From NCBI RefSeq assembly GCF_030684315.1, contig NC_081369.1, positions 9,524,035-9,588,034 of the forward strand: a stretch of DNA of 64,000 nt, written 5' to 3'. The notes under the pieces were generated by a model. That model ran no database searches. It had not been told where the DNA came from and was given only the letters and a program-made list of their open reading frames with translations. Within the stretch, counting starts at the first letter, position 1, and each line of letters begins with the position of its first letter. The DNA comes from Stegostoma tigrinum. Taxonomy: Eukaryota. This document shows, piece after piece, positions 7,712 to 35,950 of this stretch. The position numbers were made by a program, and so were the translations under genes.

Positions 7712-7766
7712 ATGCCAGCGAGGATGATTTTTTTCTGCCTGACACTACTCGAGTTTATTCTTGCTG
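7712..7766 (+). CDS. Exon 1, signal peptide MPARMIFFCLTLLEFILA
   Basis: ATG plus a hydrophobic core, 55 nt, with a phase-1 donor G|GTACTT that matches the phase of the V exon. Confidence 0.85.
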
Positions 7767-10700
7767 GTACTTTGGTTTTTGATTCACAGAACTGCTTTAA
7801 TTCATTAAAGACTTTCGATGCAGCTCCTCCTTCCATTAAATAATCTTAATTCATCTATCTTGTTAAGAACTTAACTCTCCTATCTTTATGCCGAATACGA
7901 CAGTTAACTATGTTTTATTTTGTTTCTGACAGCTGCGGACCACACTTGTTTTAGGGTTACTCAAATACCTAAAAGAGCAGCTGCGAACAGACGGGAAGAC
8001 ATTACCTTCTACTGTACATTCTCCATTTGTCAGCAAAGTTCAAAGCCAAATGTAATTTGGTGGAAGCAGGTTGGGAATGAACGTGTTCAGATTGAAGCCA
8101 GTGGTAGACAACAATTTGGATTTGAAAATGAAGCAACAGCGTTCCTTAGCTTGCTGCGCGTTGATATCCAAGATTCTGGACATTATCACTGCACGGTGAA
8201 TTACCAAGGAATCGGTCAAAGAAGCGGAACCCCGTCCCAGCTATTTGTGCGTGGTAAGTGAGAGCGACACTGTCTGAAATAATTTGAAATAACAAGATAT
8301 TTCCTGATCGCTGATTTCACCAATATTCGCGGTTAAATCGTGTCCAGTTATCATTTATACAGGAACCTACCCTTGATATTTCAGTTCCGTTGAAAAAAAG
8401 TAAAATTACACGATCAATATCACCGGTAGAAAACTGAAGCTTTTATAAATATTAACAATTTACGCTGTAATTCTAAAGACAGCCTATACACTATGTGCTT
8501 TTTGCCGATATACAAAACTTCCGATGTACATAGGCAACAAGAAACCGCTTTGTCAGGCTATTCGTCCACAATTCTTAGTCCCTGGTATGTTATTGAAGTC
8601 GTGTGACTGCCCGACAATTATTTTTTCTGAGATTGAAGATTCTAGAAATTTATTCTCACATTAATTTCACGTCATAATTTGAAAATCAGCATGAACTTAT
8701 TTCATGAGTGAAGGAATCGATGCAAAAGAAACACAGTTTGACAGATACAAGTAGGTACAATCACTGACCTAGAATAAATAAAACAACGCAGAGAATCTGT
8801 AGCAATAACAAATTTGCTGGAAAAGCTCAGCAGGTCTGGCAGCATCTGTGGAGGACAAAACAGAGTTAACGTTTCGGGTCCGGTGACCCTTCCTCAGAAC
8901 TTAAAGTTCAACTGATTCAATGTGTTTTGTCAATTGAAATGCCTTGTTTTTGAAATCCGACTGATACAGTGATCTTGGGGTAATCGGCAATCTGCAACTT
9001 CACCGCCGTTATGCACTTGAGCTTAAAAAAAACACCAGGGCAGACGAGCACAATTTGCTTTGTTCCTTTCTTGTGCGCAAGCTCAATTTAATTAATTTAT
9101 TCAAATATGCGACATAAGCATTGCGAAGCATTTTGTAGTTTTGTTCTGCCGAGGAAGGCCAAGTATTGGATTTGATAATTCAAGTAAAAATGGATAAAAG
9201 CCGCTGCCTGGAGAGCTATTTGTTTCATTAACTGAATGCTTGTGCATAAAATTAAGTTGAGAAGAAACTGCACTTCTGAGCATTGTATTTCTAGGAAAGC
9301 ATAGCGTCTGTAAATCAGCCTCAAATTTAACAATTTCTGATTTGTTCCAGTAACTTGGCTTTGTTCAATCTCTGCTTGCAGTTGCTCCAGTCCCACTGAA
9401 AATTACGCCCAAGTTTCACGAAGAAAATTCACTTGTGTCTTTGACCCTTCTGTGTGAAACAGCTGCATTTTATCCGGAGGATTTCACCCTCGCCTGGTAT
9501 AAAAACGGCACGAAAACTACAGTCGGTATAAATACGAGCAAGGTGCAGAACAGTGAGGGACTGTATGAAGTATCCAGTTCTTTGGTTGATCCTCATCCTC
9601 CCTCAAGTAATCTCAAGTATACCTGTGAAATATCTCACATCTCCCTCAAGACGCCTGCTGTTGTAACCCACAGTATTTCCACATTTGGCGGATTCCAAAA
9701 AGGCGAGTTAGTTGCTGTCAGTTTTGTTACGAAATGCATCGTAGAATAGTGCAACGTGTGGGCCTAATCCGCAGTGGTTTCATGGAGATGTATTTAAATG
9801 TATTATACTAAGTTGACATCTCTGTTGTAAGAGCATCAAAACTTATTTGGTATTCTATTTCTTTGACTTTTGAAATAGTAATTATGTTCAGAATTGAGCT
9901 GATCTATCCATTTGTTTCTTCCTATCATTTTGTCCACGTTCACCTTCTTTGCCCAAGCTATGCCTACCTCTTTGTAGGTTACGTGGCACAATCCCTCTTC
10001 TGTACCTACACTGGTCCTAAACATCACTTTTTCCTCTGTTACATTGATGACTGCATTGCCATCTCCTTGTGCTCCCATGAGGAGCTCGAGCAGTTCATCC
10101 ACTTCACCCACAGACTCCCACAGCTACCTGGAATACACCTCCTCCCACCCACCTTCCTGCAAAAATGCCATTCCCTCCTCCCAATTCCTTTGTCTCTGCC
10201 ACATCTGCTCCGAGGATGAGGCATTCCACTCCCGTACATCTCTGATGTCCTCGTTTTTCAAGGATCGCAACTTCCCTGCTCAATGGTTGAGAATGCCCTC
10301 GACGGTGTCTCCCGCATTTCCCACAACTCATCCCTCACACATCCTCCCTGCAAAAACAACCAAAACAGAATCCCCCTCATCCTCATGTACCACCTCACCA
10401 ACCTCCTGATCCAATGCATCATCTTCCGACACTTCCGCCATCTGCAATCCGACCCCACCCTTAAAGACGTTTTTCCCACCCTCATCTGCTTTTTGGAGGG
10501 ACCACTCTCTCCATGAATCCCTCGTCCGCTCCACACTCCCCTCCAGCGCTACCACACCGACACTTTTCCCTGCAACCACAGGAAGTGCTACACCTGCCCC
10601 TACACCTCCCCCTTCACCCTCATCTCAGGTCCCAAGAAGACTATCCACATCAAGCAGATGTTCACCTGCACATCTGCTAATGTGGTATACTGATCCACTG

Positions 10701-13700
10701 TTCCTGTTGTTGCCTCATCTACATCGGGGAAACCACGCGGAGGCTTGGGGACCACTTTGCAGAACACCTATTCTCAGTTCGCACTAAACAACTGCACCTC
10801 CCAGTTGCGAATCTTTTCAACTTCCACTCCCGTTCCGCAGGTGACATGTCCATCCTGGGCCTCCTGCAGTGCCGCAACGATGCTACCTGAAGGTTGCAGG
10901 AACAGCGTCCTATATTTCACTTGGGAACCCTGCAGCCCAATGGTATCAATGTGGACTTCACAGGCTTCAAAATCTCCCTCCCCCACTGCATCCCCAAACC
11001 AGTCACTTTCTGGATTACCCCAATCCAGAAATTGAAGTGGACAGTTGAGAAAATGCTTGTGATATCATTCCTCTAAATTTAAGAAAGCATAATTAGTAAG
11101 TAAGAAAGCTCGAGAACAACAGTATTTTGATTCATGGGGAATTGACTTATCTCATATTCCTACCTTTCCGAAACAGTCCTTTGTGTTCCATAAATTGACA
11201 ATCTATTCCAGAGATTGATTCAGAATTTGCCATGTTGGATCAAGAATTCACTTCGATATTTAACAGAAATAATCTTTGGCAGTTCAGCTTTTTCATTGTC
11301 CTTGAATAGCGCTGTGCAGTTGAAAGTATCATCACATTTTAAGCAAAGAACTAAAGTGACAATATTTTTAATTTAATGATCACATGCAAATAATGTCTTC
11401 TTTATCCTGCAGACAGTATCAACAATTCACTGGTCATCTGGCCTTCAGTTCGTTATGTGATTTTCTCGGCGCTTGTTGTAATTCTGTTCGTGTTTGGGAC
11501 TACAAAGTACTTGAGGATATCAGAAGTAAGGTCTACTATCAAAGCTTGCTTTTCGCACAGGGCCTGGGTTCATTTGCCATTTCTGGAAAACAAGCAGGAT
11601 ACTTATTAGGGATAATTCGAATTGGTTTAAGACTGAAAAATGCAATCATTTTGTTCTTTTTTCCCCCGCAAACGTGGATTGCTCCAAAGCCACTTAAAAA
11701 CACAAGAAGGTTCTTGGAAACATGAGTGAACCATTCAGCCCCTTTGGGCCTGTTCTGCCATTCAAAGAGATCATGGTTGATGAATGGCTTAACTCTATAT
11801 CCTTGTCCCTAAACACTTTGCTTAACAAAAATAAATCGATCCCAGATTTAAAATTAAAATTAACTTCTATTTGTTGAAAAGTCTTGCAAACATGTGCATA
11901 GAAGAGCTTCCTCACATCTTTCTTGAATGATCTTGTTGCAAGTTTTAGAGTATGACCACCAGTTCTAGAATCCACAACCAGCAGAAGTAGTATATGTTAC
12001 TGACAAAGTGTGAAGAGGGTCTTCGGTCCGCCTCCTCCTCTCTCCCTATTTATTTCAGAACCCTCACCCCATCCCCCTCTCTGATGAAGGGTCTAGGCCC
12101 GAGACATCAGCTTTTGTGCTCCTGAGATGCTGCTTGGCCTGCTGTGCTCATCCAGCTTCACACTTTGTTATTTGGATTCTCCAGCATCTGCAGTTCCCAT
12201 TATCACTGATACTATATTACTGACACTCTCTTTTGCTGTTAATGTCGTAAAGCCTTCAATTAGATCATCTCTCAACCTTCTAAATTAGAGAGAAAATAGT
12301 CTTAGTTTGTATAATCCCTCCATGTAATTAAATCCCTAAAGTCCACAATTATCATTCTGGTAATTGTACATCATACTCCTTCCAAGGTCAATGCACCTTT
12401 CCTGTGGTATGCTGCTCAGAACCGTTCACAGCTCACCAAAATGTTTTCAAATGTAAACAATGCTCACGTGTGTTAATTTCCAAAGGCACATTTCAGTTTT
12501 CAACATGAGAAATGAAATTTATCACAATAAATATGAAGTAGGTAATTCGATGCTTCTGTCAAGTAATGATTGCTCCTTGAAAGAATGGAGGATTAATAGC
12601 AGATTCTGATGTTGCAACCGTCTGATCTCTGCGAGCAACATAATCAAATGTATTCTGCCTCAACGGAACATTCACATCCTTTCTCTAATACTTTGATTCA
12701 GAAAAATGCGCTCATTTTCTGCATGGAAACTGAGTCAATATTTTCATCACTCAATGCAATTATATTTCATTGGTTTGCAGGTAAAGAAGAATGCACAAGG
12801 CAATCAGACTGCCATGTCAATGTGGTAAGTTCATATCATCATCATGCTTGGAGTTTGAAATGTTTGGATCAATGGCAATAATGGAAGAAATATACATTAA
12901 TAATGACAGAACATTTTATATCTATTTATTGAAAGACTATTCATCTGGTATGTGTGTGTTTCAGAGCCAGGTTTGAAGCGCAATTTGTACAACTTGTATT
13001 ACTGATGAAGGTTGGCAAGTGGATCTTCTTTAAAAAAAAACCGTAATCATATCTTTGAGAATGTTGCAAGGTTGAGTCACGTTTTAGGGTTGAGAACAAA
13101 TTTACTGTCTAAACCCATTGCATCTAACACTTAACATTATGTTTCAGCATGAATATGAGGAAGTTTGAATTGTTGCATTGAACACTGAGATTAACATTGT
13201 CTTCATGCAGATATATCTATAATATGGATTCTGCAAGGGATGTCGAGTCTTGGTTAAATATGCTTAGTCCTTGATGTAGAAAATCTTCGAGACAATGAAA
13301 AGGACACTTATTGAAGTGTTGTTCTTGTCCTCACAGGAAGCCATGGCGGAGGTTTCCTGCAATAGACTTAGGCAAAAACAGGAGAACTCCTAGACATACG
13401 TTTGAAATAGAGAAAAACATGCCTATTGAGGTAGGGCGGAGTGGGAGAACACAAAATCAGGATAAAATTGTGATTCAAGATAATAAAATGTGAGGCTGGA
13501 TGAACACAGCAGGCCAAGCAGCATCTCAGGAGCACAAAAGCTAATAAAATGTGAGGCTGGATGAACACAGCAGGCCAAGCAGCATCTCAGGAGCACAAAA
13601 GCTACTTGGCCTGCTGTGTTCATCCAGCCTCACATTTTATTATCTTGGATTCTCCAGCATCTGCAGTTCCCATTATCTCTAAAATTGTGATTCAGCCTGA

Positions 13701-13866
13701 CAATGAAGGCATTTGCTTCTATGGACATTAGCCAAATGTCATTTTGAAGCCTATTTTTGTGTCCTTCTGATGAGTGCTTTGCAGAAAGTTTATAAAAAAG
13801 GCCAATTAATAACATTTCCAAATAATATCTTTACAGCTCTCCATGTTGCTATCGGCAGTAAGATGA
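7712..13866 (+). CDS. Non-rearranging IgSF receptor: leader-VJ-C1-TM(Arg)-cytoplasmic tail, ~325 aa. Exons 7712-7766, 7933-8253, 9382-9702, 11413-11525, 12781-12824, 13337-13430, 13837-13866
   Basis: All seven exons have polypyrimidine-AG acceptors and GT (one GC) donors. Phases 1,1,1,0,2,0 give one continuous 978-nt frame, and two AATAAA signals follow. Exons 1-4 are well supported; use of exons 5-7 is less certain. Confidence 0.85.
7933..8253 (+). CDS. Exon 2, V-set Ig domain with germline-joined J-like G strand
   Basis: VTQ.P, ITFYC, VIWWK, LSLLRVDIQDSGHYHC, then SGTPSQLFVR. Acceptor TGACAG, donor G|GTAAGT, and no RSS interrupting the exon. Confidence 0.95.
8864..8901 (-). ncRNA. Minimal type I hammerhead ribozyme motif in a Penelope-like terminus (repeat spans about 8790-8901)
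   Basis: Minus strand reads AGTT-CTGAGGA-A-GGGTC-ACCG-GACCC-GAAA-CG-TT-AACT. The CUGANGA/GAAA core is intact, stem II is a perfect 5 bp, stem III is the palindrome ACGT and stem I is 4 bp. Confidence 0.75.
9382..9702 (+). CDS. Exon 3, C1-set Ig domain
   Basis: LTLLCETAAFYPEDFTLAWYKNG ... NSEGLYEVSSSL ... YTCEISHISL carries the canonical C1 signatures (FYP, W, YxCxxxH). Phase 1-1, ending at AAG|GCGAGT. Confidence 0.95.
9930..11010 (+). mobile_element. Penelope-like element fragment (RT C-terminus and GIY-YIG endonuclease) in intron 3
   Basis: Frameshifted motifs CPSYAYLFVG..FLCYIDDCI, TDSHSYLEYTSSHPPSCKNAIP.SQFL and NVVY..C..C...YIGET. Confidence 0.9.
11413..11525 (+). CDS. Exon 4, stalk plus TM helix with Arg (DSINNSLVIWPSVRYVIFSALVVILFVFGTTKYLRISE)
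   Basis: Acceptor TCCTGCAG with phase-1 entry, a ~22-aa hydrophobic run with an Arg codon at 11451-11453, basic stop-transfer residues, and donor GAA|GTAAGG. Not in the supplied ORF track in this frame. Confidence 0.88.
11700..12430 (-). mobile_element. CR1 LINE 3' fragment interrupted by a Penelope terminal repeat (about 12006-12210)
   Basis: ORF 11694..11975 (SRTGGHTLKL..F..DVRK). The insert is flanked by a duplicated TTACTGACA and carries CTGATGAAGGGTCTAGGCCCGAGAC. Confidence 0.75.
13478..13679. mobile_element. Foldback Penelope-terminus insertion with 15-bp TSD and internal 61-bp tandem duplication
   Basis: TAAAATTGTGATTCA occurs at 13463-13477 and 13680-13694. An exact 61-bp unit at 13482 and 13543 is followed by an inverted copy. 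Confidence 0.85.
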
Positions 13867-14083
13867 CATACAGTCCTCTAAAGTTCTCTGTTTCTGCGAA
13901 GAAGGCACAGAGATTGCTTGAGCTGCAGACTGAAAAACAAAACAAAGTAACAGAAGATATCCATGCACAAGCAAGAAATAACAAGGCTTAAATATTTCAA
14001 GGCAAAAGATTATTCTTGGACTTGGACTGATCACAATCGTTGGCACTTAGAGCTTCAGGCCTGCACAGTCTCACCTCTGTGCG

Positions 14084-14105
14084 AATAAAGCATTACCGCA
14101 ATAAA
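14084..14105 (+). terminator. Tandem polyadenylation signals of the receptor gene
   Basis: AATAAA at 14084-14089 and 14100-14105, downstream of the last exon's stops. Confidence 0.6.
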
Positions 14106-14229
14106 GCAGATAGACATAGCGAGTACCTATCCTTTTAATGGCCAATTAATCCCTATTATTGGTTTTTAAGAACACCAACAACCTGCTTTGAAAGTATGTT
14201 TGAAAGACACTTTGCTTGAAGCAGAGTAA

Positions 14230-14545
14230 ATGAGAATTGCAGGAGAATCCAAGATAACAAAGCATGAAGCTGGATGAACACAGCAGGCCCAGCAGCATCT
14301 CAGGAGCACAAAAGCTGGCATTTTGGGCCTAGACCCTTCATCAGAGAGGGGGATGGGGAGAGAGTTAGGGTTAGAGTTAAACCCTAACCCTATCGCCTGT
14401 CCCCGTCCCCCTCTCTGAAGAAGGGTCTAGGCCTGAAACGTCAGCTTTTGTGCTCCTAAGATGCTGCTGGGCCTGCTGTGTTCATCCAGCTTCACACTTT
14501 GTTATCTTGGATTCTCCAGCATCTGCAGTTCTCATTATCTCTGAT
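14230..14545. mobile_element. Inverted pair of Penelope terminal repeats with telomere-like spacer
   Basis: Two ~130-bp arms in opposite orientation, each with a hammerhead-type core. The centre is TTAGGGTTAGAGTTAAACCCTAACCCTA. Confidence 0.8.
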
Positions 14546-17500
14546 CACAATTTTAACCGCACTGTGAAGCCTCTTCCAGGGATGCCTAACCTGAAGAAGT
14601 TACCTTCCTCTCTCTGGACCAACCTTAGGGAATCTCTCTCCAACTGCAACTCTCTTGTCCACCTATCTTCTCCTCTATCCATCTTCAGAAGTTGCTTGAA
14701 GCAATTGGCTGCCTCTCAGAGCTTCTTGCTTGCTCTTATTGCATTTGTCTAATCAGAATCTAGTTGCTTGCTGTCTGCATCCATGCCTTGCCTTGATTTG
14801 TACTGTGTTTGCAGAGCCACACAGCTACCTTGCAAGTGAATGCTTCATAGTCAATGAGGTACGCAACCTGTAATACGCAATGTGTGACATGAGTGTCGCA
14901 GCTGCGACTTGTGTCAGCAGTTTATGCACCAAACACACATCATGTGTAGCCAACAGGCAGCCATGTCTCAAAGTCAAAGGGAAAGAGACGGGTGCGACAT
15001 CCTTGGAGGTACCTATCAATTACAGTGACCCAGGAGAGTAATGAACAGCTGTCTCCCATCCCAGTCCAACCATCTGCGGAAGGTCAGGCGTTTGGCCAGG
15101 GTGGTGTTGGTCAGGGTCTGCAATCCGGGGACTGGGTTATGGTCAGTCCAGTGCCTCCATAGCACTTAGGACAGTGGGAAGTGCAAAAGACAGAAGGGAA
15201 GGCAGTGATATGAGAGGAGGACTTAATCCCCAGTCAGGATCACACTGGCATTTAGGGGTGAGAGGTGGGGAGTGAGAGACGGGTCTATGACCACTCCTGG
15301 CAAGGTCACCTCATATGGCAATGGTGTGGTGATGATCGTAATTGGCACAAGCAGACTCGAGAAGATGGGCTGCTTGTGGACCTCTGCAGGTGTAAAGCCT
15401 ATGGGGTTCATGAGATGGGCAAGCAGTGAGAGAATGCAGACGTTCAGAGGCTCACAAACGTTCAAATGGAATCTAGAAGCCATTGGCCTAGATTGATCAT
15501 TGACAGCTTCCATCCTAGTGGAATTTTAATGTGTGCAATGTGAAGCCAAATGGCAGAAAATTATACTTGGATGAAGTTCGTAAGTTTATTGAACTGTGAA
15601 GGAAGGGGCTGCAGGACTCACCAGTTTGAGACTTTTTAATTGGAAACTATATTACTTGCAGACCAATGAATGTTACAAGGCAGAGATTTGCAAACTCCTT
15701 GATCCTGGGCAATAGGCATGCACTGATCATACGTGTGAACTGTATGTCACTGTCTTGGATATGAATGATTAGCTTATTTATGCCAGCACCTTTGCACTCA
15801 GGTGCGAGGGTGTTAATATCGTAACATTTCACCTCGGGAGGCGACGGTATCAGCAGAACCCTGTGCTTAATTCTCAACTCTTCATTTTGTCTCAATAGTT
15901 TCCCTTTGTCTTTCTGCCCCTCCGACAGCTTGTCTGTGCTGTCCTTGGTAACATAATTGGGTGGAGCGTACCTGCTTGGCAATGGATTCCATTGACAATG
16001 ACGATTTGGGTCAGGCAATCCTGAGAGCATTTATATCTGATATGAATACCATTTCCATTGTATTGTTTGTACCTTGAGTAACTCAGTAGCACTGTAACAA
16101 TCATATAAATTAGAAAAATTGTTCATGGCATTTCAGTTACACATCTAAAAGGCACATATCGTTGAAACGTCAACATTGATGTTAGTCATTTTTGAATCTT
16201 ACGTCCCTGCTCATAGTTTTAATGAATAGTGAACTTCAATTTCGTGAAGCATTTGCATGTCCCAAAAGGCTTGAAACCATCTGATGGTATTTAACACATC
16301 CACTCACTTGCCACTTCGTGATGTGTTGCAACAATTTCGTCATAGCAAATTTTTATTCGCAACAATTAGATCATTCTGTCTCTGATATTCTTCACTGAAT
16401 TACCATATCTATGTAGGTTTGTAAGTTTCTTCTGTAGGTCTTTATGTGACCGAGTACGCTGCCTCATTCATGATTGGCAGAGTCTATGTGAACTCTCGAA
16501 TAACGATAACATAATTAGCAAAAACATCTGGAAAATAAATAATTGTCAAAGCTCAGTGGCAATAAAAATACAGTTGGTTGAATGCTGTCATAAGATAATT
16601 GATGTTTCCTTACATATATTCATAACATTTTCCAACTTCTTATTTGACTCTCTGAGATCCATTCAAGCTCATTCTCATACAACTAAGATCACTAATTTTG
16701 GCCTTTATCGTACTGAATATCTTCTCCAGCGTCAAGTTTCCTCTGTTGCTGAACCATCATCTGTGATTTAATTCACCTGTGCTCAACGATTCCAGTACAC
16801 ACATAGCTGAACTCCCATATTTTATCTTCTGTAAACTGCAGCTAAACCTTTGTTTTTAATGTTTTAACAAATATGGGAGGTATGCTGCTAGATATTTTGG
16901 CTCCCAGTCAAGTGTAATATTAATTTTACAATTCCTATCATCGTTAAAAACTGCCATTTAATTGCCTCTCCTCATCTCTCTAATTGCTCTACCACTGGCA
17001 GCTATCCAAAAATAGTCTCAGCATCTAAGTTATGGAAACATCCTTACATCTCTCCACTCTTATCATTGCGTTAATCCGTAAATGCTTTTTAAAAGGTACC
17101 CATTTCAACGAGTGTTTGGCAGTGTAACCTTACACACCCTGATTTGTTCAATCAATGCTTCGTTTTGTGTTCATTTGATCTGTTTTGGGAGGCTTAAACA
17201 TAGGTTTGTCTTCAGATATGCTTTCTTTCCACAGCTCTGAAAGGTCAACCGTGTGAAACCTGAATGGCTCACAAAATAAACAACCTCTTCAAAGAGAGGC
17301 ACGTGTGCTTACCGCTAAACTACTGCTGACCATGTATTCTCCTTATGGGTAACAGAAGCCCATTCTTAAGGTAATTTGGTCAACCAATTGAATTTGCGAC
17401 AGCACAAGTTCGCTGTAAAGTGTGGACATTTAATTTACTGACACCATTATTTTTCGATTATGAAAATTTATTCTTATTTTGTCAATATAACCTCTGGAGT

Positions 17501-18809
17501 TAAAGAGTCAACCATTATTAAAGTTATGAACTTTAGTGTATATCCGCACTGTAAACAGTGAAAATACAGCAAAGAAAAAACACTTGTACTCCCAACCATT
17601 ACTTCTGACTAATCTACCTCAACTGTTCGAATAATCAATTTAGACACTGGTTTATTGCTTCAACAAAAGACTTCCCGATCTATTAACAACATAATAACCA
17701 CAATTGAGCGAAACCGAGCAACAAAATAATCCAATCTGTCTGTTTTACTAATTCAAAACCCTTTGTTTTTCGCACCATTCATACAAAGGGCAAACAGACA
17801 AACAAGCACAGCTAAGGGACAAATACAATCTACAAGCAAAACTAGCGAGATTACTTCAGTGATTTCCGTGATGTGTTGTTCCCTGAGCATAGGTGATGTT
17901 TTCTTATTTATTTTCTGAACGCGCTGATCAAGGTCAGCTTTCAGTTTAATCAGATAAAGGCAGTAAAACTTTATACCTGAGTTCAGAGGAAGAGTCACTC
18001 GCTCCCGAATATTAAGTCTGATTTCTCTCCACAGTTGCTGCCACACCTGCCAAGCTTTTCGCCAATTTCTCCTATTGTCTCATAATTTAAACTTAGTTTT
18101 CTATCCTGCAAGCGTTCACGGACTGCTCATTTGAGGTGAGGCAGCGAAGTTTTTTTAAAAAATGTCTTCATTCTGAAACATCAACGGTAAGATTCCTTTT
18201 CGCAGAAAAATGAACAGAAGCCCAGAATCCAATTGAAACTCTGTCCATTCCTTGACTGGCTGACAGGCTTTTGCACGAGGCCCCAGACTCCATTCAATAT
18301 CTAACATGTTTTGAAAACAGGGTCTTTACCAGGCCTATTGGAACCAGCAGTGATCGAGTTGATAGTCACCTTCGGCGGACTGTTTAAGCATAATGCTCCT
18401 CCCCGCTCATAAAAAAACTGCAACTCTAAAGTAAAAACAACACAAATGGTCAGCTGATCCCAAGTCTTTCTAATCTGTCGAGTGAAAGACTGTTTATCAG
18501 TTAATGAATTAGGTAAAGTAATGCAAGCTATCTTTAATTTTGGCTATTTATTGAGAAGTCTCACAGACAATCATATACTGAAGGAATTATTGTAACTTTG
18601 TTGCATACAGCAACCGAAATAACACTCCTCAAATAAGCCATTTATACCTCACAGTGTAGTTCTCCAGACATTTGCTACTGAAGAATTCTAGAGTTAAAAT
18701 TTTACAGCGTTCTATTTTTCAAAGTGAATGATTGATCTCAGGTATGATTCCAATCAATGGCGTCTGGCCCTTGGTGGGTCCAGTTTCGATTCTGATATAC
18801 AGTAGTTAC

Positions 18810-19847
18810 TCAATAGACAATAGGTGCTGGAGTAGGTCATTCGACCCTTCGAGCCAGCACCACCATTCATTATGATCATGGCTGATCATCCACTATCAGT
18901 ATCCTGTTCCTGCCTTATCCCCATAACCCTTGATTCCACTATCTTTAAGAGCTCTATCCATCACTTTCTTGAAAGTATCCAGAGACTTGGCCTCCACTGC
19001 CTTCTGGGGCAGAGCACTCCACATATCCACCACTCTCTGGGTGAAGAAGTTTTTCCTCAACTCTTGTTCTAAATAGCTTACCCCTTATTCTTAAACTGTG
19101 TCCTCTGGTTCTGGACTCACCCAGCAGCGGAAATATACTTCCTGCCTCCAGAGTGTCCAATCCCTTAATAATCTTATATGTCTCACTCAGATCCCCTCCC
19201 ATCCTTCTAAACTCAAGGGTATACAAGCCCAGTCGCTCCGATCTTTCAACATATGACCGCCCTCCCATTCCGGGAATTGACCTCGTGAACCTATGCTGCA
19301 CTCCCTCAATAGCAAGAAAGTCCTTCCTCAAATTTGGAGACCAAAACTGCACACGATACTCCAGGTGCGGTCTCACCAGGGCCCTGTACAGCTGCAGAAG
19401 GACCTCTTTGCTCCTATACTCAATTCCTCTTGTTATGAAGGCCAGCATGCTATTAGCTTTCTTCACTGCCTGCTGTACCTGCATGTTTGCTTTCATTGAA
19501 TGATGTACAAGAAAACCCAGATCTCGTTGTACTTCCCCTTTATCTAATTTGACCCCATTTAGATAGTAATCTGCCTTCCTGTTGTTGCCACCAAAGCGGA
19601 TAACCACACATTTATCCACATTAAACTGCATCTGCCATGCATCCGTCCACTCACCTAGCCTGTCCAAGTCACCCTGTATTCTCATAACATCCTCTTTACA
19701 TTTCACACTGCCACCCAGCTTTGTGTTATCAGAAAATTTGCTAATGTTACTTTTAATGCCTTCGTCTCTATCATTAATGTATATTGTAAACAGCTGCGGT
19801 TCCAGCGCCGAACCTTGTGGTACCCCACTGGTTACCGCCTGCCATTG
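18810..19847 (-). mobile_element. CR1 LINE, 5'-truncated, relatively young
   Basis: ORF 18954..19928 contains SGVPQGS.L.PQLFTIYIND, KFSDNTKLG and LVRPHLEY.VQFWSP; the 3'UTR ends at about 18810. Confidence 0.95.
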
Positions 19848-21109
19848 CGTTCTCCAGAGTTTTGTTACTGAAGAATTCGGGAGTTGAAATCTTAGAGAAT
19901 TCTGCTTTTCAAAGTTATGGTGTGACATTATTGATGATCATTTAGACTCTTTCATTGACAATATTGACTACTGCTGTGGAGCCATCAAGCCTGCAGCTTG
20001 CCTCCTTCGCCGAAGTAGCTTCCCTGTTCCCCGTGACATTTGCCACGGATTGCCTGCTTGAAACACAACTTCCTGCAATCAGCTGCTTAAATTCTTCCAC
20101 GAGAAAATAATTTCTCCTGGTGGTGTAATACCACCAGTTGTGAAGCCGGTATTAAAGTGATATTGTTATGTAAATTCGACTTCTCTTTTTCCAATGCATA
20201 GCTAATTGCTTTCAATTCCCGATTTGTCCTTGTCCCTTAACGATTATATTCCGGGTTATTGTCAGTTCTTTCAACCTATGAACACTAATGAACGTTCTGA
20301 AGTTTACATTATTACAATGACCTTTCACTGAAGATGGAAAACTTAGAAACGTTTTCGACTTTAAATACCGAAAGTGTAAAGTGTGGGGAAAAAGCCAAAA
20401 CGTTAGGTCTGTGATAATTTGAGAGGCAGCAGAGATTAAACAGTAAAAAGAGAGTTGGCCTTGCAAGGCCAGTCGGTCACATTAAAGTGGTATAGTTGGA
20501 AGTATAAGAACATGAGCAACTGCAGTCTTATCAGGAAAACCTGAGTGGAATATCGGGAAAATGGGTCAGTTGAAAAGATTGTGTAGAAGGGCTGTTAATG
20601 GGAGACCAATGAATATTTACTTTACAAACCAAAAGAAAGGTGTGGACGACCACAACAGCAACAACAAGCTTGCCATGTGAAAGGAAATGAATTGGGAGTG
20701 CGATTTGGAGATTATCTTTTGCTCCGTGTTTCCCATTTTTATGAGGGAACATTGCCAAGCTGCTGTGCAGCTCTGTAAGGTGGCGGCAAAAGACATCAAG
20801 GCGTCATTTACTTTTGCTTTCCACTGAGTGACAGTAATGGCCACTGTGATACCTTTAAATTGGCCCGTGTTTTAATCTCTGACCTCTCCCCTCTGTTGTG
20901 TCACTTACTTGCCGCTAAACCTGTCCTCCAATCAGTCAGGGCCAACTTCAGGGGACATTGTGCCTAAAGATGCCTTCCTTCTCAGCATGCCGTATGGACC
21001 CAGAAAGTGTTCCGATGCAAATGCAAGTGAAAATCCTCAATGTATAATATCTGTTCAACATTTGTCATTTTCTTATTTCCTATGATAACATTTTAAACTG
21101 TGTGATAGC

Positions 21110-21270
21110 ACTGCGTTATTAAATAACTTCACAGATGCCGGTACCACGTCAGCAAGTCACCCTTATTCAAAAGTGCATAATACTTGACACAGACCCGGCT
21201 CCCTGACAGCCAGCTCTCAGAGTCCACATAATATCCGACACTCCATTCTGCTCTGCTAGCTCAGAGCCAG
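21110..21270 (-). mobile_element. Partial solo LTR (Gypsy)
   Basis: Resembles the LTR at 58310-58440 (AAATAAC..CACAGA...TCACCCTT(T)ATT...TTGACAC...CAGAGT). Confidence 0.55.
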
Positions 21271-21599
21271 TCGATAGAGTTAAGAAAATTTGAGACCGTT
21301 TTTTGCTCTTTTTATGGTTTCCTACATTACCAAAGAACCTAAAGGGGGTTAGCAGTACTACTTATATTTCCGCACCGCCCCCGAAATCATACGTATCTCT
21401 GCGTGTATGGACAGTGGCGCAGGGAAAAGTGAAAACATGGCGCAACAACTTTGTTACGCTGCCCATCACAAGGAAAACCCCCATTGGCTTGTGAAACGGT
21501 AACAAGGAAGTCCTAATAAGGGCAATGCATGCATCAAAATGTGAAGGGGAGAAGAGCAGAATTATATCCAAATTGTTTTAGAGGGAGAATTAAAGTAGT

Positions 21600-24500
21600 G
21601 TATCCCCAGCAGTGTTCATCTCTCCATAAAGGCATGGAGAGCATTGGTAGACAATATATTTCCTCTTCAATGACACCTGGGCTCAAATGGAACTGTGGGC
21701 GGGGGACAGAGAGTTCACAGAGATGACCCCACCCACAGCCTACTGCCTGGACATGTTTCCAGCCAGCCTCACCAGGCCAATGCCCCTGCTTATATCTGTC
21801 AGCCCCAGCTCCCTTATTGGAGTAGATTTAGAGCCCCAATCAGGGAAGTCATATTCAACAAGGTCCACCTGGCTGACCTCATTACAATTGTTACATTCTC
21901 CACCCCACCCCCACCAAATCCAGGGACATAGGCCTGTTCTTTGTCTTGTAGCCTCTCATGGGGCATTTTTGCACCAGGTCTGGTTCCTCCAATTTGGCCT
22001 CAGGAATGGGTAGCATGTACCAGGCCATGGCCTACCTCTTAAATCTGGAGCGTCTCAGAACAAGTTCATTCTCTTCCTCAGCTGGTGAAGGTGTGAGTCT
22101 GTGACATTCACTGTGTCCATCTGAGTGTCCAGGTTGCTTTGATGCTAGACAGAAAGGGAGAACTCACAGGCTTTGACAGCCTTTCTGGCTGTCCTGAGGT
22201 GCCAGGTATGATTTGATCCTGCCATGTTTATGAGTTTGCAGCTTTCATGTGGTCCATGTGCTTGTTTAGGACTGCTTCACCTCCGTGAACTTTGTACGTC
22301 ATGGTTCCTGGCTTTAGGTTAACCATGACTTTTACCAACACAGGGCTATTCCCATGGTTCGGTACTAAACTTAGTTCCCTGAAGTAAACCTTTTCCCTCA
22401 CTTAGAGGACCCTTGTGTCTGGCATTGGCATTCCTGATGTTATTTTACCGTCCCCCATGGTCCAGGAAGACCAGATTTAACCTGGGTGTGGAGTCTTCTC
22501 CCTGTTAGCAACTCTGCAGGAGCTATGCTGGTAATTGCATGAGGGGTTGTCTGAAAATCAAACAGGAACTGGGACAGCTTACTATCCTGTGAAGATGTAG
22601 GCTGTTCTGTAATCTTAACTTCAAAGTTTGAACTGCTCTTTCTGTCAGATCATGGCTGTCCTTATATGCTTAATGCCATTTGTCTTTATGAAATACGTGA
22701 GTTCCTTGCTGGTACTTGATGGCCCATTGTCAGTGACCAACACTTCTGAAGCCCATGCATTGCAGAAGATGCCTGAAACCTTTCCATCATCATCCTTGTA
22801 TTTGAAAAATGAACTCAAGGCACATTCAACCACTTTGAGTGGGCATCCACAATGACTAAGAAAGTTGAGAACATGAAAGGGCCAGCAGAGTCAATGTATA
22901 ACTGAGCCCACAGGTCATTCTCACGGATGTGGGGGAGCTGCTGGCAGTAATTATTATCCTTGTTGGTACTTTGGTTGCTGCCCTATCAACACAGCCATGT
23001 CTGGATCCGATCTTGCCCACCAGACATAATATCTTGTCAACAACTTCAGTTGGAATTTGCCTGATGACCCTGGTGGAGTTCCCCCAGTATCTGGCAGCAA
23101 CCTTTGCTTGGGACAATCGGTCTTGCTCCTCATAATAAAATGCCATTCTCGACAGTAATAGGGGCTCGCCAGGTCTAGTTTCAATTATGCAATGACCCTT
23201 CTGTTTCCCCTATCACCACCAGCTGTTTTAGTTTTGCAGATCTGTTCACAATCTGATATTGTCAGCGGAGACCAGAAGGGTTCCTGAAAATTTACAACCA
23301 GAATGGTCTCTTCAAGTAGCAGCAACATCGGTGGTCTATCTACCAGCTGGAGGCAGCTCAAGGCGTTCACATGTGCTACTTGGCCTCTTGGACAGTGTTC
23401 CAACTTGTAATTGTATCCACTTAGCATGAGAACCCACCACTGAATTAGAGGTGATGTAATGGGCTGCTTGGCCTTGTCCTCTTTGAATAGCCCTAGAAGG
23501 GGTTAGTGGCCTGTTAGTATTACAAATTTACTTCCATAAGGATATTAGTGCACCTTTCTCACACAAAAGATGACTGTCAAATCCGTTTTCTTTATGTACG
23601 AGTATATATGCTCTACGTCAGCCAAAGTCTGGGAACCATGTGGTAGTGAGCATTCCTCTCCATTCGGCAATCTGTGAGTCAACAGCACCCTGATACAATA
23701 TGTGGAGGCATTGCAAATCTGTGCAAGATGTTGCTTGGGATCATAGTGTGCCAACACCTCAGATGATGATAACAGCTTCTTCCCTTTCTTGAAGGTGACA
23801 TCTTGGCTGTGAGACAATTTTCTAGGCTGATCCTTTGTCAATAGTAAACGTAAGGGTCGCAGATTGAAGGTCAGATTACTTTGGAATTTTTCAACATAAT
23901 TCACCAATCGCAGGGCAGCACTAATCTCCATTGTAGATGTTAAAGATGGGCCACTTTGATTGTCCTCACTTTTCTTCCCAGGTTTTGTAAGCTGGTGTTG
24001 TCAACTGCGTACCACAAATAGAACACTTGGGATATCTGAAACACACATTTAGTTCCTTTCTAAATGATACAGTCAGCTTAGAGAAATATCTAAAGACTGC
24101 GTCCAAGTTCTCTAAGTGCACCTTTTGGCCTTCTCTGTTATTAGCATGAGACAGGTGAACTGGAGTAGGCCTTGTGAAATGTTCTCCATTGTCTTCTGAA
24201 AAATAGGCTGATGACTCCCAAATTAGCAGTCTTGTATATTTGTGGGTACAAATTGCATCATATGTCTCAGAATCCTCATTTAACCAAAATAGCAGGTACG
24301 TGTGACTCATGTCCAGGCTCATGGAGGACAGCCCCCACCAAAACACACCAAATTTCCGTATATGTCTTCCATGTGAAGGATTGGGTATTGAGAAGAAATT
24401 TATCCATTGTTTAAAATCCTCACTGGTGGAATGATTCTTTCACTTTCCAGCCTCCTGATTTCTGCCTCTACTTCTGCACATAAGGCAAACAACACTAGAT

Positions 24501-35338: not shown

Positions 35339-35950
35339 ACGTCCCAAGAAACACAACTTCACCCTATTCTCACCTTGATCCTTCCTTGTACAGGTACATG
35401 TCTTCAATTCAACAACTGCTAGATAGAAAAAGCTGTAAAATGTGTAGGTGATATTAACTATGTATGGGCATGACTATTTATGCTGATGTTGCGACAAGCT
35501 CTTTATGGAGTTTCTGGCCTTTCAGTGGAAGGGATACATCTGTGCAATCATAACTGCTGCTCCTGAGCCCTAGTTGTTCCCTTGTTTGCTGCTACAAGTT
35601 CCCGACACTCTGTCGTTCTCTTGTAAATAAATGTTTCGTATTTTTGTTTGTTTTTGCAACAGTTGCCGCTCGTATGACTCAATTTCTGCGATCGCCCAAT
35701 GTAACAGTAAGACAGACCGTGACTTTTCACTGCTCGTTGCTGCTATTCCGAGGTAGGAACCAAGTCGTGGTGCATTGGTGGAAAGCTGGTGACCAGGAAT
35801 TCTTGAACTCAAAACAAGATTCCTGGAGAGTGTTTCACATTGAGAACGAAGCCAGCGCAAACCCACAATGTGCGTTTTAGAAATGTTGGCATCTGTTATT
35901 GCAGTTTGAACAGACTGGAAATGGAATCGGCATACAGCTGAATGTAAGCG
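35339..35950 (+). pseudogene. Leader plus VJ exon pseudogene, paralog of the 7712 gene
   Basis: A 55-nt leader (35339-35393) starts with ACG and ends G|GTACAT. The V exon (35663-35950) reads MTQ..VTFHC..VVVHWWKAG..FHIENEASA / HNVRFRNVGICYC / GNGIGIQLNVS with two frameshifts and a mutated donor G|GAGAGT. Confidence 0.85.

What the first reader, a model, noticed from the sequence alone, without database searches (positions are those of the whole stretch)
11413..13991. Apparent inhibitory-to-activating switch: TM arginine plus an out-of-frame fossil ITIM tail
Seen: the TM has an Arg near its outer end (WPSVRYVIFSALVVILFVFG). Read in phase 1, the last exon gives 51 open codons with MTYSPL (13863-13880) and a second motif DIHAQA whose CAT is one base from TAT (Tyr). 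The TM exon is 113 nt and exits in phase 0. Every combination of exons 5-7 then stops before or out of frame with MTYSPL (full chain ends ...LSMLLSAVR*). Adding one base at GAA|GTAAGG would return exon 7 to the ITIM frame, although exon 6 then has three stops around an xTYV remnant. Established: a TM Arg in this position couples NKp30/NKp46-type receptors to CD3zeta/FcRgamma, and activating KIRs arose from inhibitory ones by tail truncation. Inference: the same conversion may be recorded here.
Basis: partly seen in the sequence, partly recalled or inferred. Interest (0 to 1): 0.8.

Follow-up and report, generated by a model that had tools for sequence, protein, structure and literature searches.

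The report
Shark paired receptor with dead ITIM tail
This zebra-shark immune-receptor gene has almost the same outer part as a neighbouring inhibitory receptor but carries an arginine in its membrane anchor and only broken remains of the inhibitory tail, the same inhibitory-to-activating pattern known from mammalian receptor families, although nobody has yet shown that this version is made or signals.

Summary
The 113-nt TM exon (11413-11525) encodes an Arg and exits in phase 0. Short-read contigs from four runs show no indel there. Every canonical exon combination stops before MTYSPL or reads it out of frame.

The out-of-frame ORF is a real fossil. A profile of the family's last-exon tails ranks ORF 13707-13988 first of 3,394 window ORFs (E 0.001; next best 1.4). 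MTYSPL aligns with the family's LTYATL. DIHAQA aligns with its terminal AVYSEA.

The gene belongs to a large, apparently undescribed SIRP-like V-C1-TM family of sharks, rays and chimaeras. In Stegostoma, XP_059507523 has a 98% identical ectodomain, an uncharged TM and three intact tail tyrosine motifs. That is an inhibitory partner.

Three corrections:
- Exon 6's ancestral frame is the open frame 1, not the 'xTYV' frame.
- There are three frame breaks, not one. The break that disconnects the ITIM is at the exon 6/last-exon junction.
- The C1 exon's family donor is GC here, and the RefSeq models read through it and omit the TM exon.

No RNA run was available, so activating function and even membrane anchoring remain inferred. 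This is a new member of a known kind. Other windows of this scan had already noted the family nearby on this genome.

The parts
7712..7766 (+). Leader exon (ATG at 7712; phase-1 donor G|GTAC)
   Evidence: Read directly. Identical to residues 1-18 of RefSeq product P0002 and of P0152.
7933..8253 (+). V exon with a germline-joined J-like end (..GTPSQLFVR), 321 nt, phase 1 to 1
   Evidence: Pfam I-set/Ig/V-set hits. Family HMM E 2e-42. 100% identical to P0152.
9382..9702 (+). C1 exon, 321 nt, up to the family donor after ..GGFQK G
   Evidence: Pfam C1-set 1.9e-10. P0152 splices after FQK. About 97% identical to P0152.
9703..9749 (+). GC donor (AAG|GCGAGT, GC at 9703-9704), followed by the read-through codons ELVAVSFVTKCIVE and stop TAG at 9747-9749 that the RefSeq models use
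   Evidence: Sequence. RefSeq products P0002, P0151 and P0163 all end GELVAVSFVTKCIVE. The donor flanks score as near-perfect consensus.
11413..11525 (+). TM exon, 113 nt, phase 1 in and phase 0 out. Predicted span LVIWPSVRYVIFSALVVILFVFG with Arg (CGT 11451-11453) at residue 8 of 23. One nucleotide short of the family length.
   Evidence: Collinear without gaps with P0152's TM region. W-to-KEEC spacing. No indel in contigs of four runs.
12781..12824 (+). Tail exon 5, 44 nt. Read as VKKNAQGNQTAMSM. The ancestral frame (from 12783) is KEECTRQSDCHVNV.
   Evidence: Smith-Waterman 44 against P0152, p <= 3e-4; the other frames score <= 15. tblastn. Good splice sites.
13337..13430 (+). Tail exon 6, 94 nt. 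Frame 1 (from 13338) is both the frame read and the ancestral one: KPWRRFPAIDLGKNRRTPRHTFEIEKNMPIE. The first ITIM Tyr is replaced by Phe (TTT 13353-13355). The donor GAG|GTAGGG lacks the split-codon base.
   Evidence: Smith-Waterman 49 (P0152) and 51 (P0015), p <= 3e-4; frame 0 scores only 20 and 27. Residue-by-residue collinearity with P0152.
13441..13446 (+). Weak alternative donor (GGA|GTGGGA). If used, it would lengthen exon 6 by 10 nt and put MTYSPL back in frame.
   Evidence: Frame arithmetic. Rough donor score -2.4 against +4.0 for the canonical site. No RNA data.
13837..14105 (+). Last exon. The frame actually read gives LSMLLSAVR with stop TGA at 13864-13866. AATAAA at 14084 and 14100.
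13839..13991 (+). Fossil ITIM-tail ORF (50 codons plus TAA). MTYSPL (13863-13880) aligns with family LTYATL, LLELQT with TEYAELQT (Tyr lost, about 7 residues deleted), and DIHAQA (CAT 13962-13964) with AVYSEA.
   Evidence: HMM E 0.001, ranked first of 3,394 ORFs. Smith-Waterman 76 against P0015. Family alignment.

Best explanation
This is a zebra-shark (Stegostoma tigrinum) member of a large cartilaginous-fish family of SIRP-like receptors. Members have a leader, a germline-joined V domain, one C1 domain, a TM segment and a multi-tyrosine tail.

It descends from an ITIM-bearing inhibitory gene, and its signalling half has been rebuilt.
- Shown: the TM exon has diverged strongly (about 31% identity to its partner, against 98% in the ectodomain). 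It now has an Arg about one third of the way in from the outer face.
- Shown: the tail exons keep their splice sites, but their ancestral reading frame is broken at all three junctions. There is a net -1 nt at the end of the TM exon, +1/-2 between exons 5 and 6, and -1 nt in the split codon at the exon 6 donor.
- Shown: translation from the canonical sites therefore ends at LSMLLSAVR*, nine codons into the last exon. The one surviving ITIM-type tyrosine (MTYSPL) lies out of frame in the 3' UTR.
- Shown: the other four family tyrosine positions have become F, P, L and H.
- Inferred: if the C1 exon's GC donor is used, the product is a membrane receptor with the same ligand-binding face as the inhibitory paralogue XP_059507523 and no ITIM. 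Its TM Arg would pair with an acidic residue of an ITAM adaptor, making it the activating or counter-balancing half of a paired receptor.
For: - Family and architecture.
- Inhibitory partner: P0152 is 98% identical over the ectodomain. It has an uncharged TM and the motifs VQYSAV, VTYTTL and TEYAAL.
- Ancestral frames: each tail exon has one frame that stands out against the family, at p <= 3e-4. The last-exon HMM gives E 0.001 and ranks first of 3,394 ORFs.
- Frame breaks: W-to-KEEC is 29 residues in 4 of 4 relatives, against 28 codons plus 2 nt here. The spacing from the first to the third family tail tyrosine is 37 residues in P0152 and P0015. The window is collinear with P0152, but codon 27 has only 2 nt.
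- Not an assembly error: no indel in or at the edge of any tail exon in contigs of four runs.
- Arg position: residue 8 of a 23-residue hydrophobic span.
- A conserved class with an Arg-bearing TM and a short, tyrosine-free tail exists in rays. Hypanus P0166 and Hemitrygon P0167 carry W(I/V)LRCAMG.. and ..KGNEECFTEANxSEMKRT(V/I)ST*.
- Scyliorhinus P0014 has FRYTVGG.. and a 6-residue tail.
- The GC donor's flanks are a perfect consensus.
- Established knowledge: activating KIR and Ly49 arose from inhibitory genes by gaining a charged TM residue and losing the ITIMs (PMC2213150). A basic TM residue assembles with the acidic pair of a signalling dimer (PMC1440944).
Against: - No RNA run holds the locus, so no splice junction is verified.
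- Every RefSeq product of this gene type (P0002, with three accessions, P0151 and P0163) reads through the GC donor and stops 15 codons later, without a TM.
- The variant contigs differ from the window at two sites in the TM exon, both non-synonymous (P to S, T to A). The density is about the same as in the flanking intron, so no constraint on the exon is visible.
- Arg could be a neutral change in a relaxed exon.
- The adaptor is unknown. A 2014 survey found no FcRgamma in shark genomes (PMC4016189).
Confidence: 0.55

Rival explanations
1. The gene is a decaying duplicate or a secreted decoy. GT-to-GC at the C1 donor stops splicing to the TM exon. The gene then yields at most a soluble V-C1 protein ending GELVAVSFVTKCIVE*. 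The TM exon (Arg included) and all tail exons would be unused relics that drift neutrally.
For: - RefSeq models for all copies of this type end at the read-through stop.
- Three separate frame breaks in the tail.
- Both differences from the variant contigs in the TM exon are non-synonymous, at about the intron rate.
- No RNA holder was found.
Against: - The GC donor has otherwise perfect flanks (AAG|GCGAGT), the typical form of working GC-AG introns.
- P0152's C1 exon is about 97% identical, and its own donor letters are unknown.
- The TM exon is open, strongly hydrophobic (mean Kyte-Doolittle 2.2) and keeps strong acceptor and donor sites.
- All tail splice sites and the poly(A) signals are intact.
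- The three ancestral frames together have no stop in 95 codons (chance about 0.0015), so any decay is young.
- Arg sits next to the position conserved in the ray class with an Arg-bearing TM and a short tail.
Confidence: 0.3
2. The ITIM is still used. An unrecognised splice choice would put MTYSPL in frame behind the Arg-bearing TM, for example the alternative exon 6 donor at 13440|13441, which adds VGR and a split Thr codon. That would give a dual-function or still inhibitory receptor.
For: - The ITIM-frame ORF is still open over 50 codons (chance 0.034).
- The +10 donor gives exactly phase 1, and frame 1 stays open past 13430.
- Receptors with both a charged TM residue and an ITIM exist (rat Ly49 intermediates, PMC2213150).
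Against: - The alternative donor is weak (-2.4 against +4.0).
- The intact paralogue P0152 has no such insertion (NMNNE|DPQDAIG).
- Only one of five tail tyrosines would remain.
- No transcript evidence either way.
Confidence: 0.08
3. The frame problem is a 1-nt assembly error at the TM donor, and the gene is an ordinary inhibitory receptor.
For: The missing bases lie next to short G runs (GAA|GTAAGG and GAG|GTAGGG), a typical place for long-read errors.
Against: - Contigs from four public runs cover both sites without any indel.
- One base would not repair the tail, because three junctions are out of register.
- Four of the five tyrosines are substituted.
Confidence: 0.02

Closest known systems
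Short-tailed activating KIR (KIR2DS/3DS) and activating Ly49, derived from inhibitory homologues (Abi-Rached & Parham 2005, PMC2213150)
   Same: - The ectodomain is nearly identical to that of an inhibitory partner.
- A basic residue was gained in the TM.
- The tail was altered in length and frame so that the ITIMs are lost.
- The ectodomain appears to have been exchanged or homogenised by recombination, while the signalling half stays distinct.
   Different: - The fold and lineage are unrelated: V plus C1 domains, not C2-type Ig or C-type lectin.
- Arg rather than Lys.
- Three junctional frame breaks rather than a few point changes.
- Cartilaginous fish.
- Neither expression nor an adaptor has been shown.
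Mammalian SIRPalpha / SIRPbeta1 pair
   Same: - A V domain followed by a C1-set domain.
- SIRPalpha is the best non-immunoglobulin PDB hit of the paralogue (2wng_A, 7e-14).
- NCBI names many family members 'SIRPalpha-like'.
- From my own knowledge of SIRPalpha, not tested here: its tail carries a comparable series of tyrosine motifs, like the family's YAxLDL .. TVYAQ .. LTYAxL .. TEYAEL series.
- From my own knowledge, not tested here: SIRPbeta has a near-identical ectodomain, a basic TM residue and a short tail.
   Different: - One C1 domain, not two.
- Arg near the outer third of the TM rather than SIRPbeta's Lys.
- Immunoglobulin heavy chains score as well as SIRP, so orthology is not shown.
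- The ligand is unknown.
NKp30 (NCR3) / NKp46-type receptors with a TM Arg that pairs with CD3zeta/FcRgamma
   Same: - A germline-joined VJ-type V domain (NKp30).
- An Arg towards the outer end of the TM.
- A short tail without signalling motifs.
   Different: - NKp30 has no C1 domain and no ITIM-bearing twin.
- No sequence relationship was tested beyond the Ig fold.
- The adaptor in sharks is unknown; FcRgamma was not found in a 2014 survey (PMC4016189).
UrIg / UrIg2, the non-rearranging VJ-C1 genes of elasmobranchs (Flajnik et al. 2025, PMC12227049)
   Same: - The VJ domain is encoded by one exon and followed by C1 domains.
- Multi-C1 proteins are among the top hits of this C1 exon.
- UrIg2 appears among the PDB hits (9dmx_A).
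   Different: - UrIg is secreted, with three C1 domains. UrIg2 has nine C1 domains.
- Neither is described as a paired ITIM/charged-TM family.

Membership tests
Chondrichthyan SIRP-like V-C1-TM receptor family (unnamed; NCBI calls members 'SIRPalpha-like', 'tapasin-related-like' or 'MHC class II beta-like') | Single-exon V domain with a J-like end | tested here: met
   Exon 7933-8253. Pfam Ig/I-set/V-set hits. Family HMM 2e-42.
Chondrichthyan SIRP-like V-C1-TM receptor family (unnamed; NCBI calls members 'SIRPalpha-like', 'tapasin-related-like' or 'MHC class II beta-like') | One C1-set domain exon that closely matches family members | tested here: met
   Pfam C1-set 1.9e-10. 45-62% identity to shark, ray and chimaera proteins, with 709 hits at E <= 1e-3.
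Chondrichthyan SIRP-like V-C1-TM receptor family (unnamed; NCBI calls members 'SIRPalpha-like', 'tapasin-related-like' or 'MHC class II beta-like') | TM exon with a conserved Trp, followed by the KEEC juxtamembrane exon at fixed spacing | tested here: met
   Collinear, ungapped match to P0152's TM. KEECTRQ is present in exon 5 frame 2. The spacing is 29 residues in relatives; here it is 28 codons plus 2 nt, one nucleotide short.
Chondrichthyan SIRP-like V-C1-TM receptor family (unnamed; NCBI calls members 'SIRPalpha-like', 'tapasin-related-like' or 'MHC class II beta-like') | Multi-tyrosine (ITIM/ITSM-like) cytoplasmic tail in frame (the long-tail class) | tested here: not met
   Only relics remain. 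One Tyr survives out of frame, and four positions are now F, P, L and H. The gene therefore belongs to the family but not to its inhibitory class.
[quoted passage not shown] | Ectodomain nearly identical to an ITIM-bearing partner in the same genome | tested here: met
   98% identity to P0152 = XP_059507523, on the same 68-Mb chromosome record.
[quoted passage not shown] | Basic residue inside the TM helix | tested here: met
   Arg at residue 8 of the 23-residue hydrophobic span. The partner has Ser at that position.
[quoted passage not shown] | No ITIM in the translated tail | tested here: met
   All canonical exon combinations stop before MTYSPL or read it out of frame. Caveat: a weak alternative donor at 13440|13441.
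[quoted passage not shown] | Expressed as a membrane protein containing that TM | tested here: inconclusive
   No RNA run was found. The RefSeq models stop before the TM exon because the donor is GC. The donor flanks are consensus.
[quoted passage not shown] | Association with an ITAM adaptor (DAP12, FcRgamma or CD3zeta) through the basic residue | not testable with these tools
   Needs co-expression and co-precipitation experiments.
Mammalian SIRP family | Ectodomain of V plus two C1 domains | tested here: not met
   The gene and the whole window contain only one C1 exon.
Mammalian SIRP family | Specific sequence relationship to SIRP rather than to other V-C1 proteins | tested here: inconclusive
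   SIRPalpha 2wng_A scores 7e-14, but IgA1 heavy chain scores 2e-16 and many Fab chains are close.
NKp30 (NCR3) | Single V domain directly followed by stalk and TM, with no C domain | tested here: not met
   A C1 exon (9382-9702) lies between the V and TM exons.

The most novel reading that the evidence does not exclude
Cartilaginous fishes would have a SIRP-like V-C1 paired-receptor system in which Arg-bearing, ITIM-less partners arise again and again from inhibitory genes: in stingrays as a conserved class, and in the zebra shark recently enough that the dead ITIM exons are still open. In the zebra-shark copies, a GC donor at the C1 exon would act as a splice switch between a secreted decoy and the Arg-anchored signalling form. 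That would place the full logic of mammalian paired receptors, including soluble decoys, at the base of jawed vertebrates, in a family built like an antigen-receptor chain.
Probability: 0.15. Interest if true: 0.6.

Novelty: new member of a known kind. Interest (0 to 1): 0.42.

Why it matters
Paired inhibitory and activating receptors are thought to arise under pathogen pressure. The activating twin is usually read as a counter-measure to pathogens that exploit the inhibitory receptor.

Here the process is visible at nucleotide level in a shark, in a gene family that I could not find described in any paper. The evidence includes the intact inhibitory twin, the altered membrane anchor and the still recognisable dead tail.

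If this gene's transcript and an adaptor protein are confirmed, it would give a dated, testable example from a cartilaginous fish. It would show that this evolutionary route is not special to mammalian NK-cell receptors.

It also shows that automatic annotation misnames this family ('MHC class II beta-like', 'tapasin-related') and, in this gene type, truncates it.

Tried and rejected
- RNA evidence: the look-up of sequencing runs found no RNA holder, only four DNA runs kept as contigs. No splice junction could be checked.
Exon lengths and phases of XP_059507523 and other relatives had to be inferred from residue spacing.
- My first C1 donor (ACA|GTATTT at 9672) is rejected. P0152 shows that the family splices after ..GGFQK, and the 9672 site scores -4.1.
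- The family TM-block HMM does not detect the window's TM exon. Homology of that exon rests on a 35-residue ungapped pairwise match to P0152 and on its position.
- The HMMs for tail blocks B and C are weak on their own (E 2.7 and 0.08). Pairwise scores with shuffling carry those exons.
- The reported minus-strand 'lost inhibitory partner' at 16352-21520 gave no family match on the minus strand by tblastn or HMM. That stretch holds a reverse-transcriptase ORF.
- Three literature searches for a description of the family found none.
Full report
**What is in the window**

The finding sits in the 3' half of one gene on the + strand. I read the gene as follows.
- Leader exon 7712-7766.
- V exon 7933-8253, with a germline-joined J-like end.
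- C1 exon 9382-9702.
- TM exon 11413-11525.
- Two small tail exons, 12781-12824 and 13337-13430.
- A last exon from 13837, with AATAAA at 14084 and 14100.

Pfam calls the second exon Ig/I-set/V-set and the third C1-set at 1.9e-10. The introns are full of very high-copy repeats.

**Checking the observation**

- The TM exon is 113 nt, enters in phase 1 and leaves in phase 0. It encodes ..SLVIWPSVRYVIFSALVVILFVFGTTKYLRISE.
- The best hydrophobic span is LVIWPSVRYVIFSALVVILFVFG, with Arg at residue 8 of 23.
- Read from 13839, the last exon is open for 50 codons. MTYSPL lies at 13863-13880 and CAT (His) at 13962-13964.
- Every combination of the canonical exons stops before that ORF or reads it out of frame. 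The full chain and the direct TM-to-last splice both end LSMLLSAVR*, with the stop TGA at 13864-13866.

The suspected 1-nt assembly error is not there.
- Contigs of four public DNA runs (two samples, one study) cover 10950-11776, 12189-13498 and 13659-14271.
- Their only gap is a 1-nt deletion at 13032 in the intron between exons 5 and 6. No tail exon or exon edge has an indel.
- The contigs differ from the window by substitutions: 11442 C>T (Pro to Ser), 11502 A>G (Thr to Ala) and 9416 T>A (Phe to Leu).
- The last of these is the residue seen in the RefSeq proteins P0151 and P0152. The contigs may therefore come from another haplotype or from a near-identical paralogous copy.
- Either way, a second version of the TM exon is also 113 nt and keeps the Arg.

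**What the gene is**

I searched the C1 exon alone with phmmer against 1.84 billion representative proteins. It gave 709 hits at E <= 1e-3.

The single-domain hits at 45-62% identity are V-C1-TM proteins from many cartilaginous fishes: Scyliorhinus, Mustelus, Heptranchias, Heterodontus, Chiloscyllium, Hemiscyllium, Pristis, Hypanus, Hemitrygon, Mobula, Narcine and Callorhinchus. NCBI labels them variously 'SIRPalpha-like', 'SIRPbeta-1-like', 'tapasin-related-like' or 'MHC class II beta-like'.

The long-tailed members share a conserved tail..(I/V)xYAxLDL..KTPRPKHQEERTVYAQ | TKQG..NKLTYAxLDL..GSKKT..DKSTEYAELQ..KQR.VTEAxYSEA..*

P0002 (XP_059507815, XP_059507818 and XP_059507819, Stegostoma tigrinum) is identical to the window's leader, V and C1 exons. 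The window is therefore zebra shark.

The best non-immunoglobulin PDB match of the paralogue P0152 is SIRPalpha (2wng_A, 7e-14), but immunoglobulin heavy chains score as well. I call the family SIRP-like, not SIRP.

I found no paper describing the family. Earlier notes of this scan reached the same conclusion for relatives 0.5-0.6 Mb away.

**The inhibitory twin**

The 90% cluster of P0002 also holds P0152 (XP_059507523, 363 aa), from the same chromosome record.
- Its ectodomain is 98% identical to the window gene, with the V exon at 100%.
- After ..GGFQK it continues EECNTPVVLWALISIMVGFALVVLMAVIAKRHGLRFNKN KEECTRQPDDRDK.. That is an uncharged TM and a tail with VQYSAV, VTYTTL and TEYAAL.
- The window's TM exon aligns to it without gaps over 35 residues at only about 31% identity. 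Arg sits opposite Ser.

A near-identical ligand-binding half joined to a strongly diverged signalling half is the signature of a paired receptor. The boundary lies in the C1-TM intron.

**Is the out-of-frame ORF a fossil?**

Yes.
- A profile of the family's last-exon block was searched against all 3,394 six-frame ORFs of the window. It ranks ORF 13707-13988 first. E is 0.001, or 0.0025 when the same-species paralogue is left out. The next best ORF has E 1.4. The match consists of two collinear pieces.
- Smith-Waterman scoring, with shuffling, of each frame of each tail exon against family tails picks one frame per exon, each at p <= 3e-4.
  - Exon 5: frame 2, KEECTRQSDCHVNV (44 against P0152).
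  - Exon 6: frame 1, KPWRRFPAIDLGKNRRTPRHTFEIEKNMPIE (49 against P0152, 51 against P0015).
  - Last exon: the ITIM frame (76 against P0015).
- MTYSPL corresponds to the family's (L/M)TYAxL.
- LLELQT corresponds to TEYAELQT, with the Tyr lost and about seven residues deleted.
- DIHAQA corresponds to the terminal AxYSEA.
- In exon 6, FPAIDL corresponds to YAxLDL (Tyr to Phe). NMPIE corresponds to RTVYAQ (Tyr to Pro).
- One of the five family tyrosines survives.

**Where the frame is broken**

That break is real. The spacing from the conserved Trp to (K/N)EEC is 29 residues in all four relatives that have the motif. The window has 28 codons plus the two bases GT that open exon 5. This corresponds to a 114-nt TM exon in the relatives, ending in a split codon.

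It is not the only break.
- In their ancestral frames, exon 5 leaves in phase 0 but exon 6 enters in phase 2.
- Exon 6 leaves in phase 0 but the last exon needs phase 1.
- From the Phe of exon 6 to the Tyr of MTYSPL, the window is collinear with P0152 residue by residue (TF at 16-17, NM at 22-23, AIG at 31-33, TY at 37-38). Codon 27, which is split by the intron, has only its last two bases (CT at 13837-13838).

Three consequences follow.
- The first two shifts cancel, so only exon 5 is read in a foreign frame.
- Exon 6 is read in its old frame.
- The break that removes the ITIM lies at the exon 6 donor, GAG|GTAGGG (13430|13431).

The three ancestral frames together contain no stop in 95 codons, which chance would give about 0.15% of the time. 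The decay is therefore young, or the frames were still translated until recently.

**What remains uncertain: is the TM exon used at all?**

In P0152 the C1 exon is spliced after ..FQK+G. In the window the intron at that point begins GC (AAG|GCGAGT).
- All RefSeq products of this gene type (P0002, P0151 and P0163) read through the site and end GELVAVSFVTKCIVE*, without a TM.
- Apart from the C at the second intron position, the donor flanks are a perfect consensus by a rough weight matrix. That is what working GC-AG introns look like.
- The TM exon's acceptor, its open frame and its hydrophobic core are intact.
- No RNA run could be found, so the question stays open.
- Both differences in the TM exon between the window and the variant contigs are non-synonymous, at about the intron rate. 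The numbers are too small to decide anything.

**Support for a functional Arg class**

In stingrays, Hypanus P0166 and Hemitrygon P0167 share W(I/V)LRCAMG.. with Arg one position from the window's. Both have a short tyrosine-free tail..KGNEECFTEANxSEMKRT(V/I)ST*. Mobula P0059, another ray, has Gly at that position and a full ITIM tail.

Scyliorhinus P0014 has ..FRYTVGG.. and a six-residue tail.

A third class has Asp in the TM (..IIVDHV..) and short tails.

The family thus contains conserved forms with a charged TM and a short tail. The window gene looks like a more recent, independently made one.

**Mechanism I commit to**

The gene was an inhibitory receptor. Its signalling half was converted by a basic TM residue and by loss of the ITIM frame. 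Its ectodomain was kept or re-homogenised with that of the inhibitory twin. This route was reconstructed for activating KIR and Ly49 (PMC2213150), and the established role of basic TM residues in adaptor assembly fits it (PMC1440944).

- Shown: the ancestry, the frame breaks, the twin and the Arg position.
- Inferred: use of the GC donor, membrane expression, pairing with an adaptor and activating output.
- The adaptor is unknown. A 2014 survey found no FcRgamma in sharks (PMC4016189).

**Rivals**

- Decoy or pseudogene, with the TM exon unused: 0.3.
- ITIM still reachable, for instance through the weak donor at 13440|13441, which would add VGR plus a split Thr codon: 0.08.
- Assembly error: 0.02.

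**Verdict**

It is unproven about function.

This is a new member of a well-known kind of evolutionary event, in an undescribed shark gene family that other windows of this scan had already noted nearby. Interest is moderate.

Noticed in passing
window 35554-35938 (+): A second family V exon (family HMM 3e-16), split over two reading frames (35554-35877 and 35807-35938). It most resembles the 323-aa V-C1-TM proteins of Hemiscyllium and Chiloscyllium (P0071 type). No matching C1 exon was found downstream, so it is probably a frameshifted V relic.
   Followed up: partly
window 61082-61372 (+): A third V-like fragment (HMM 2.6e-5), broken into three short ORFs with a stop. It looks like a decayed family V exon.
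   Followed up: partly
Neither tblastn with this gene's exons nor the family HMM finds any family exon on the minus strand there. The stretch holds a reverse-transcriptase ORF at 18957-19937 (Pfam RVT_1, 4.6e-7).
   Followed up: partly
window 9800-11130, 11972-12300, 13475-13800, 14143-14750: Extremely high-copy repeats fill the introns and the 3' flank. Summed contig depth reaches the millions. The SINE-like unit (translation ..GWMNTAGQAASQEHKS..) occurs in both orientations and forms an inverted pair at 13475-13680.
   Followed up: no
window 22400-24440 (-): Retroelement ORFs on the minus strand. The stretch 23548-24000 matches an RT RNase H-like domain (Pfam PF17919, 4.7e-12).
   Followed up: partly
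family proteins P0010, P0023, P0030, P0076, P0086, P0149 (not in the window): A third class in the same family has an Asp-His pair inside the TM (..IIVDHV.. or ..IIFDHV..) and short tails. It is conserved from Heptranchias to Scyliorhinus, Heterodontus and Chiloscyllium. An acidic TM residue in a receptor chain is unusual and unexplained.
   Followed up: no
window 9703-9749 (+) and RefSeq XP_059507814 to XP_059507819: Several near-identical Stegostoma gene products share the same read-through end, GELVAVSFVTKCIVE*. The GC donor therefore predates the duplication of these copies. Automatic names for these proteins ('H-2 class II ... beta chain-like') are misleading.
   Followed up: partly
window 11505-11519 (+): The juxtamembrane sequence TKYLRI fits the ITSM pattern TxYxx(I/V), but it lies directly at the inner membrane face. 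A Tyr at about this place recurs in relatives (TWYRKQ, TRYRLQ, ARYKSR). Its significance is unknown.
   Followed up: no
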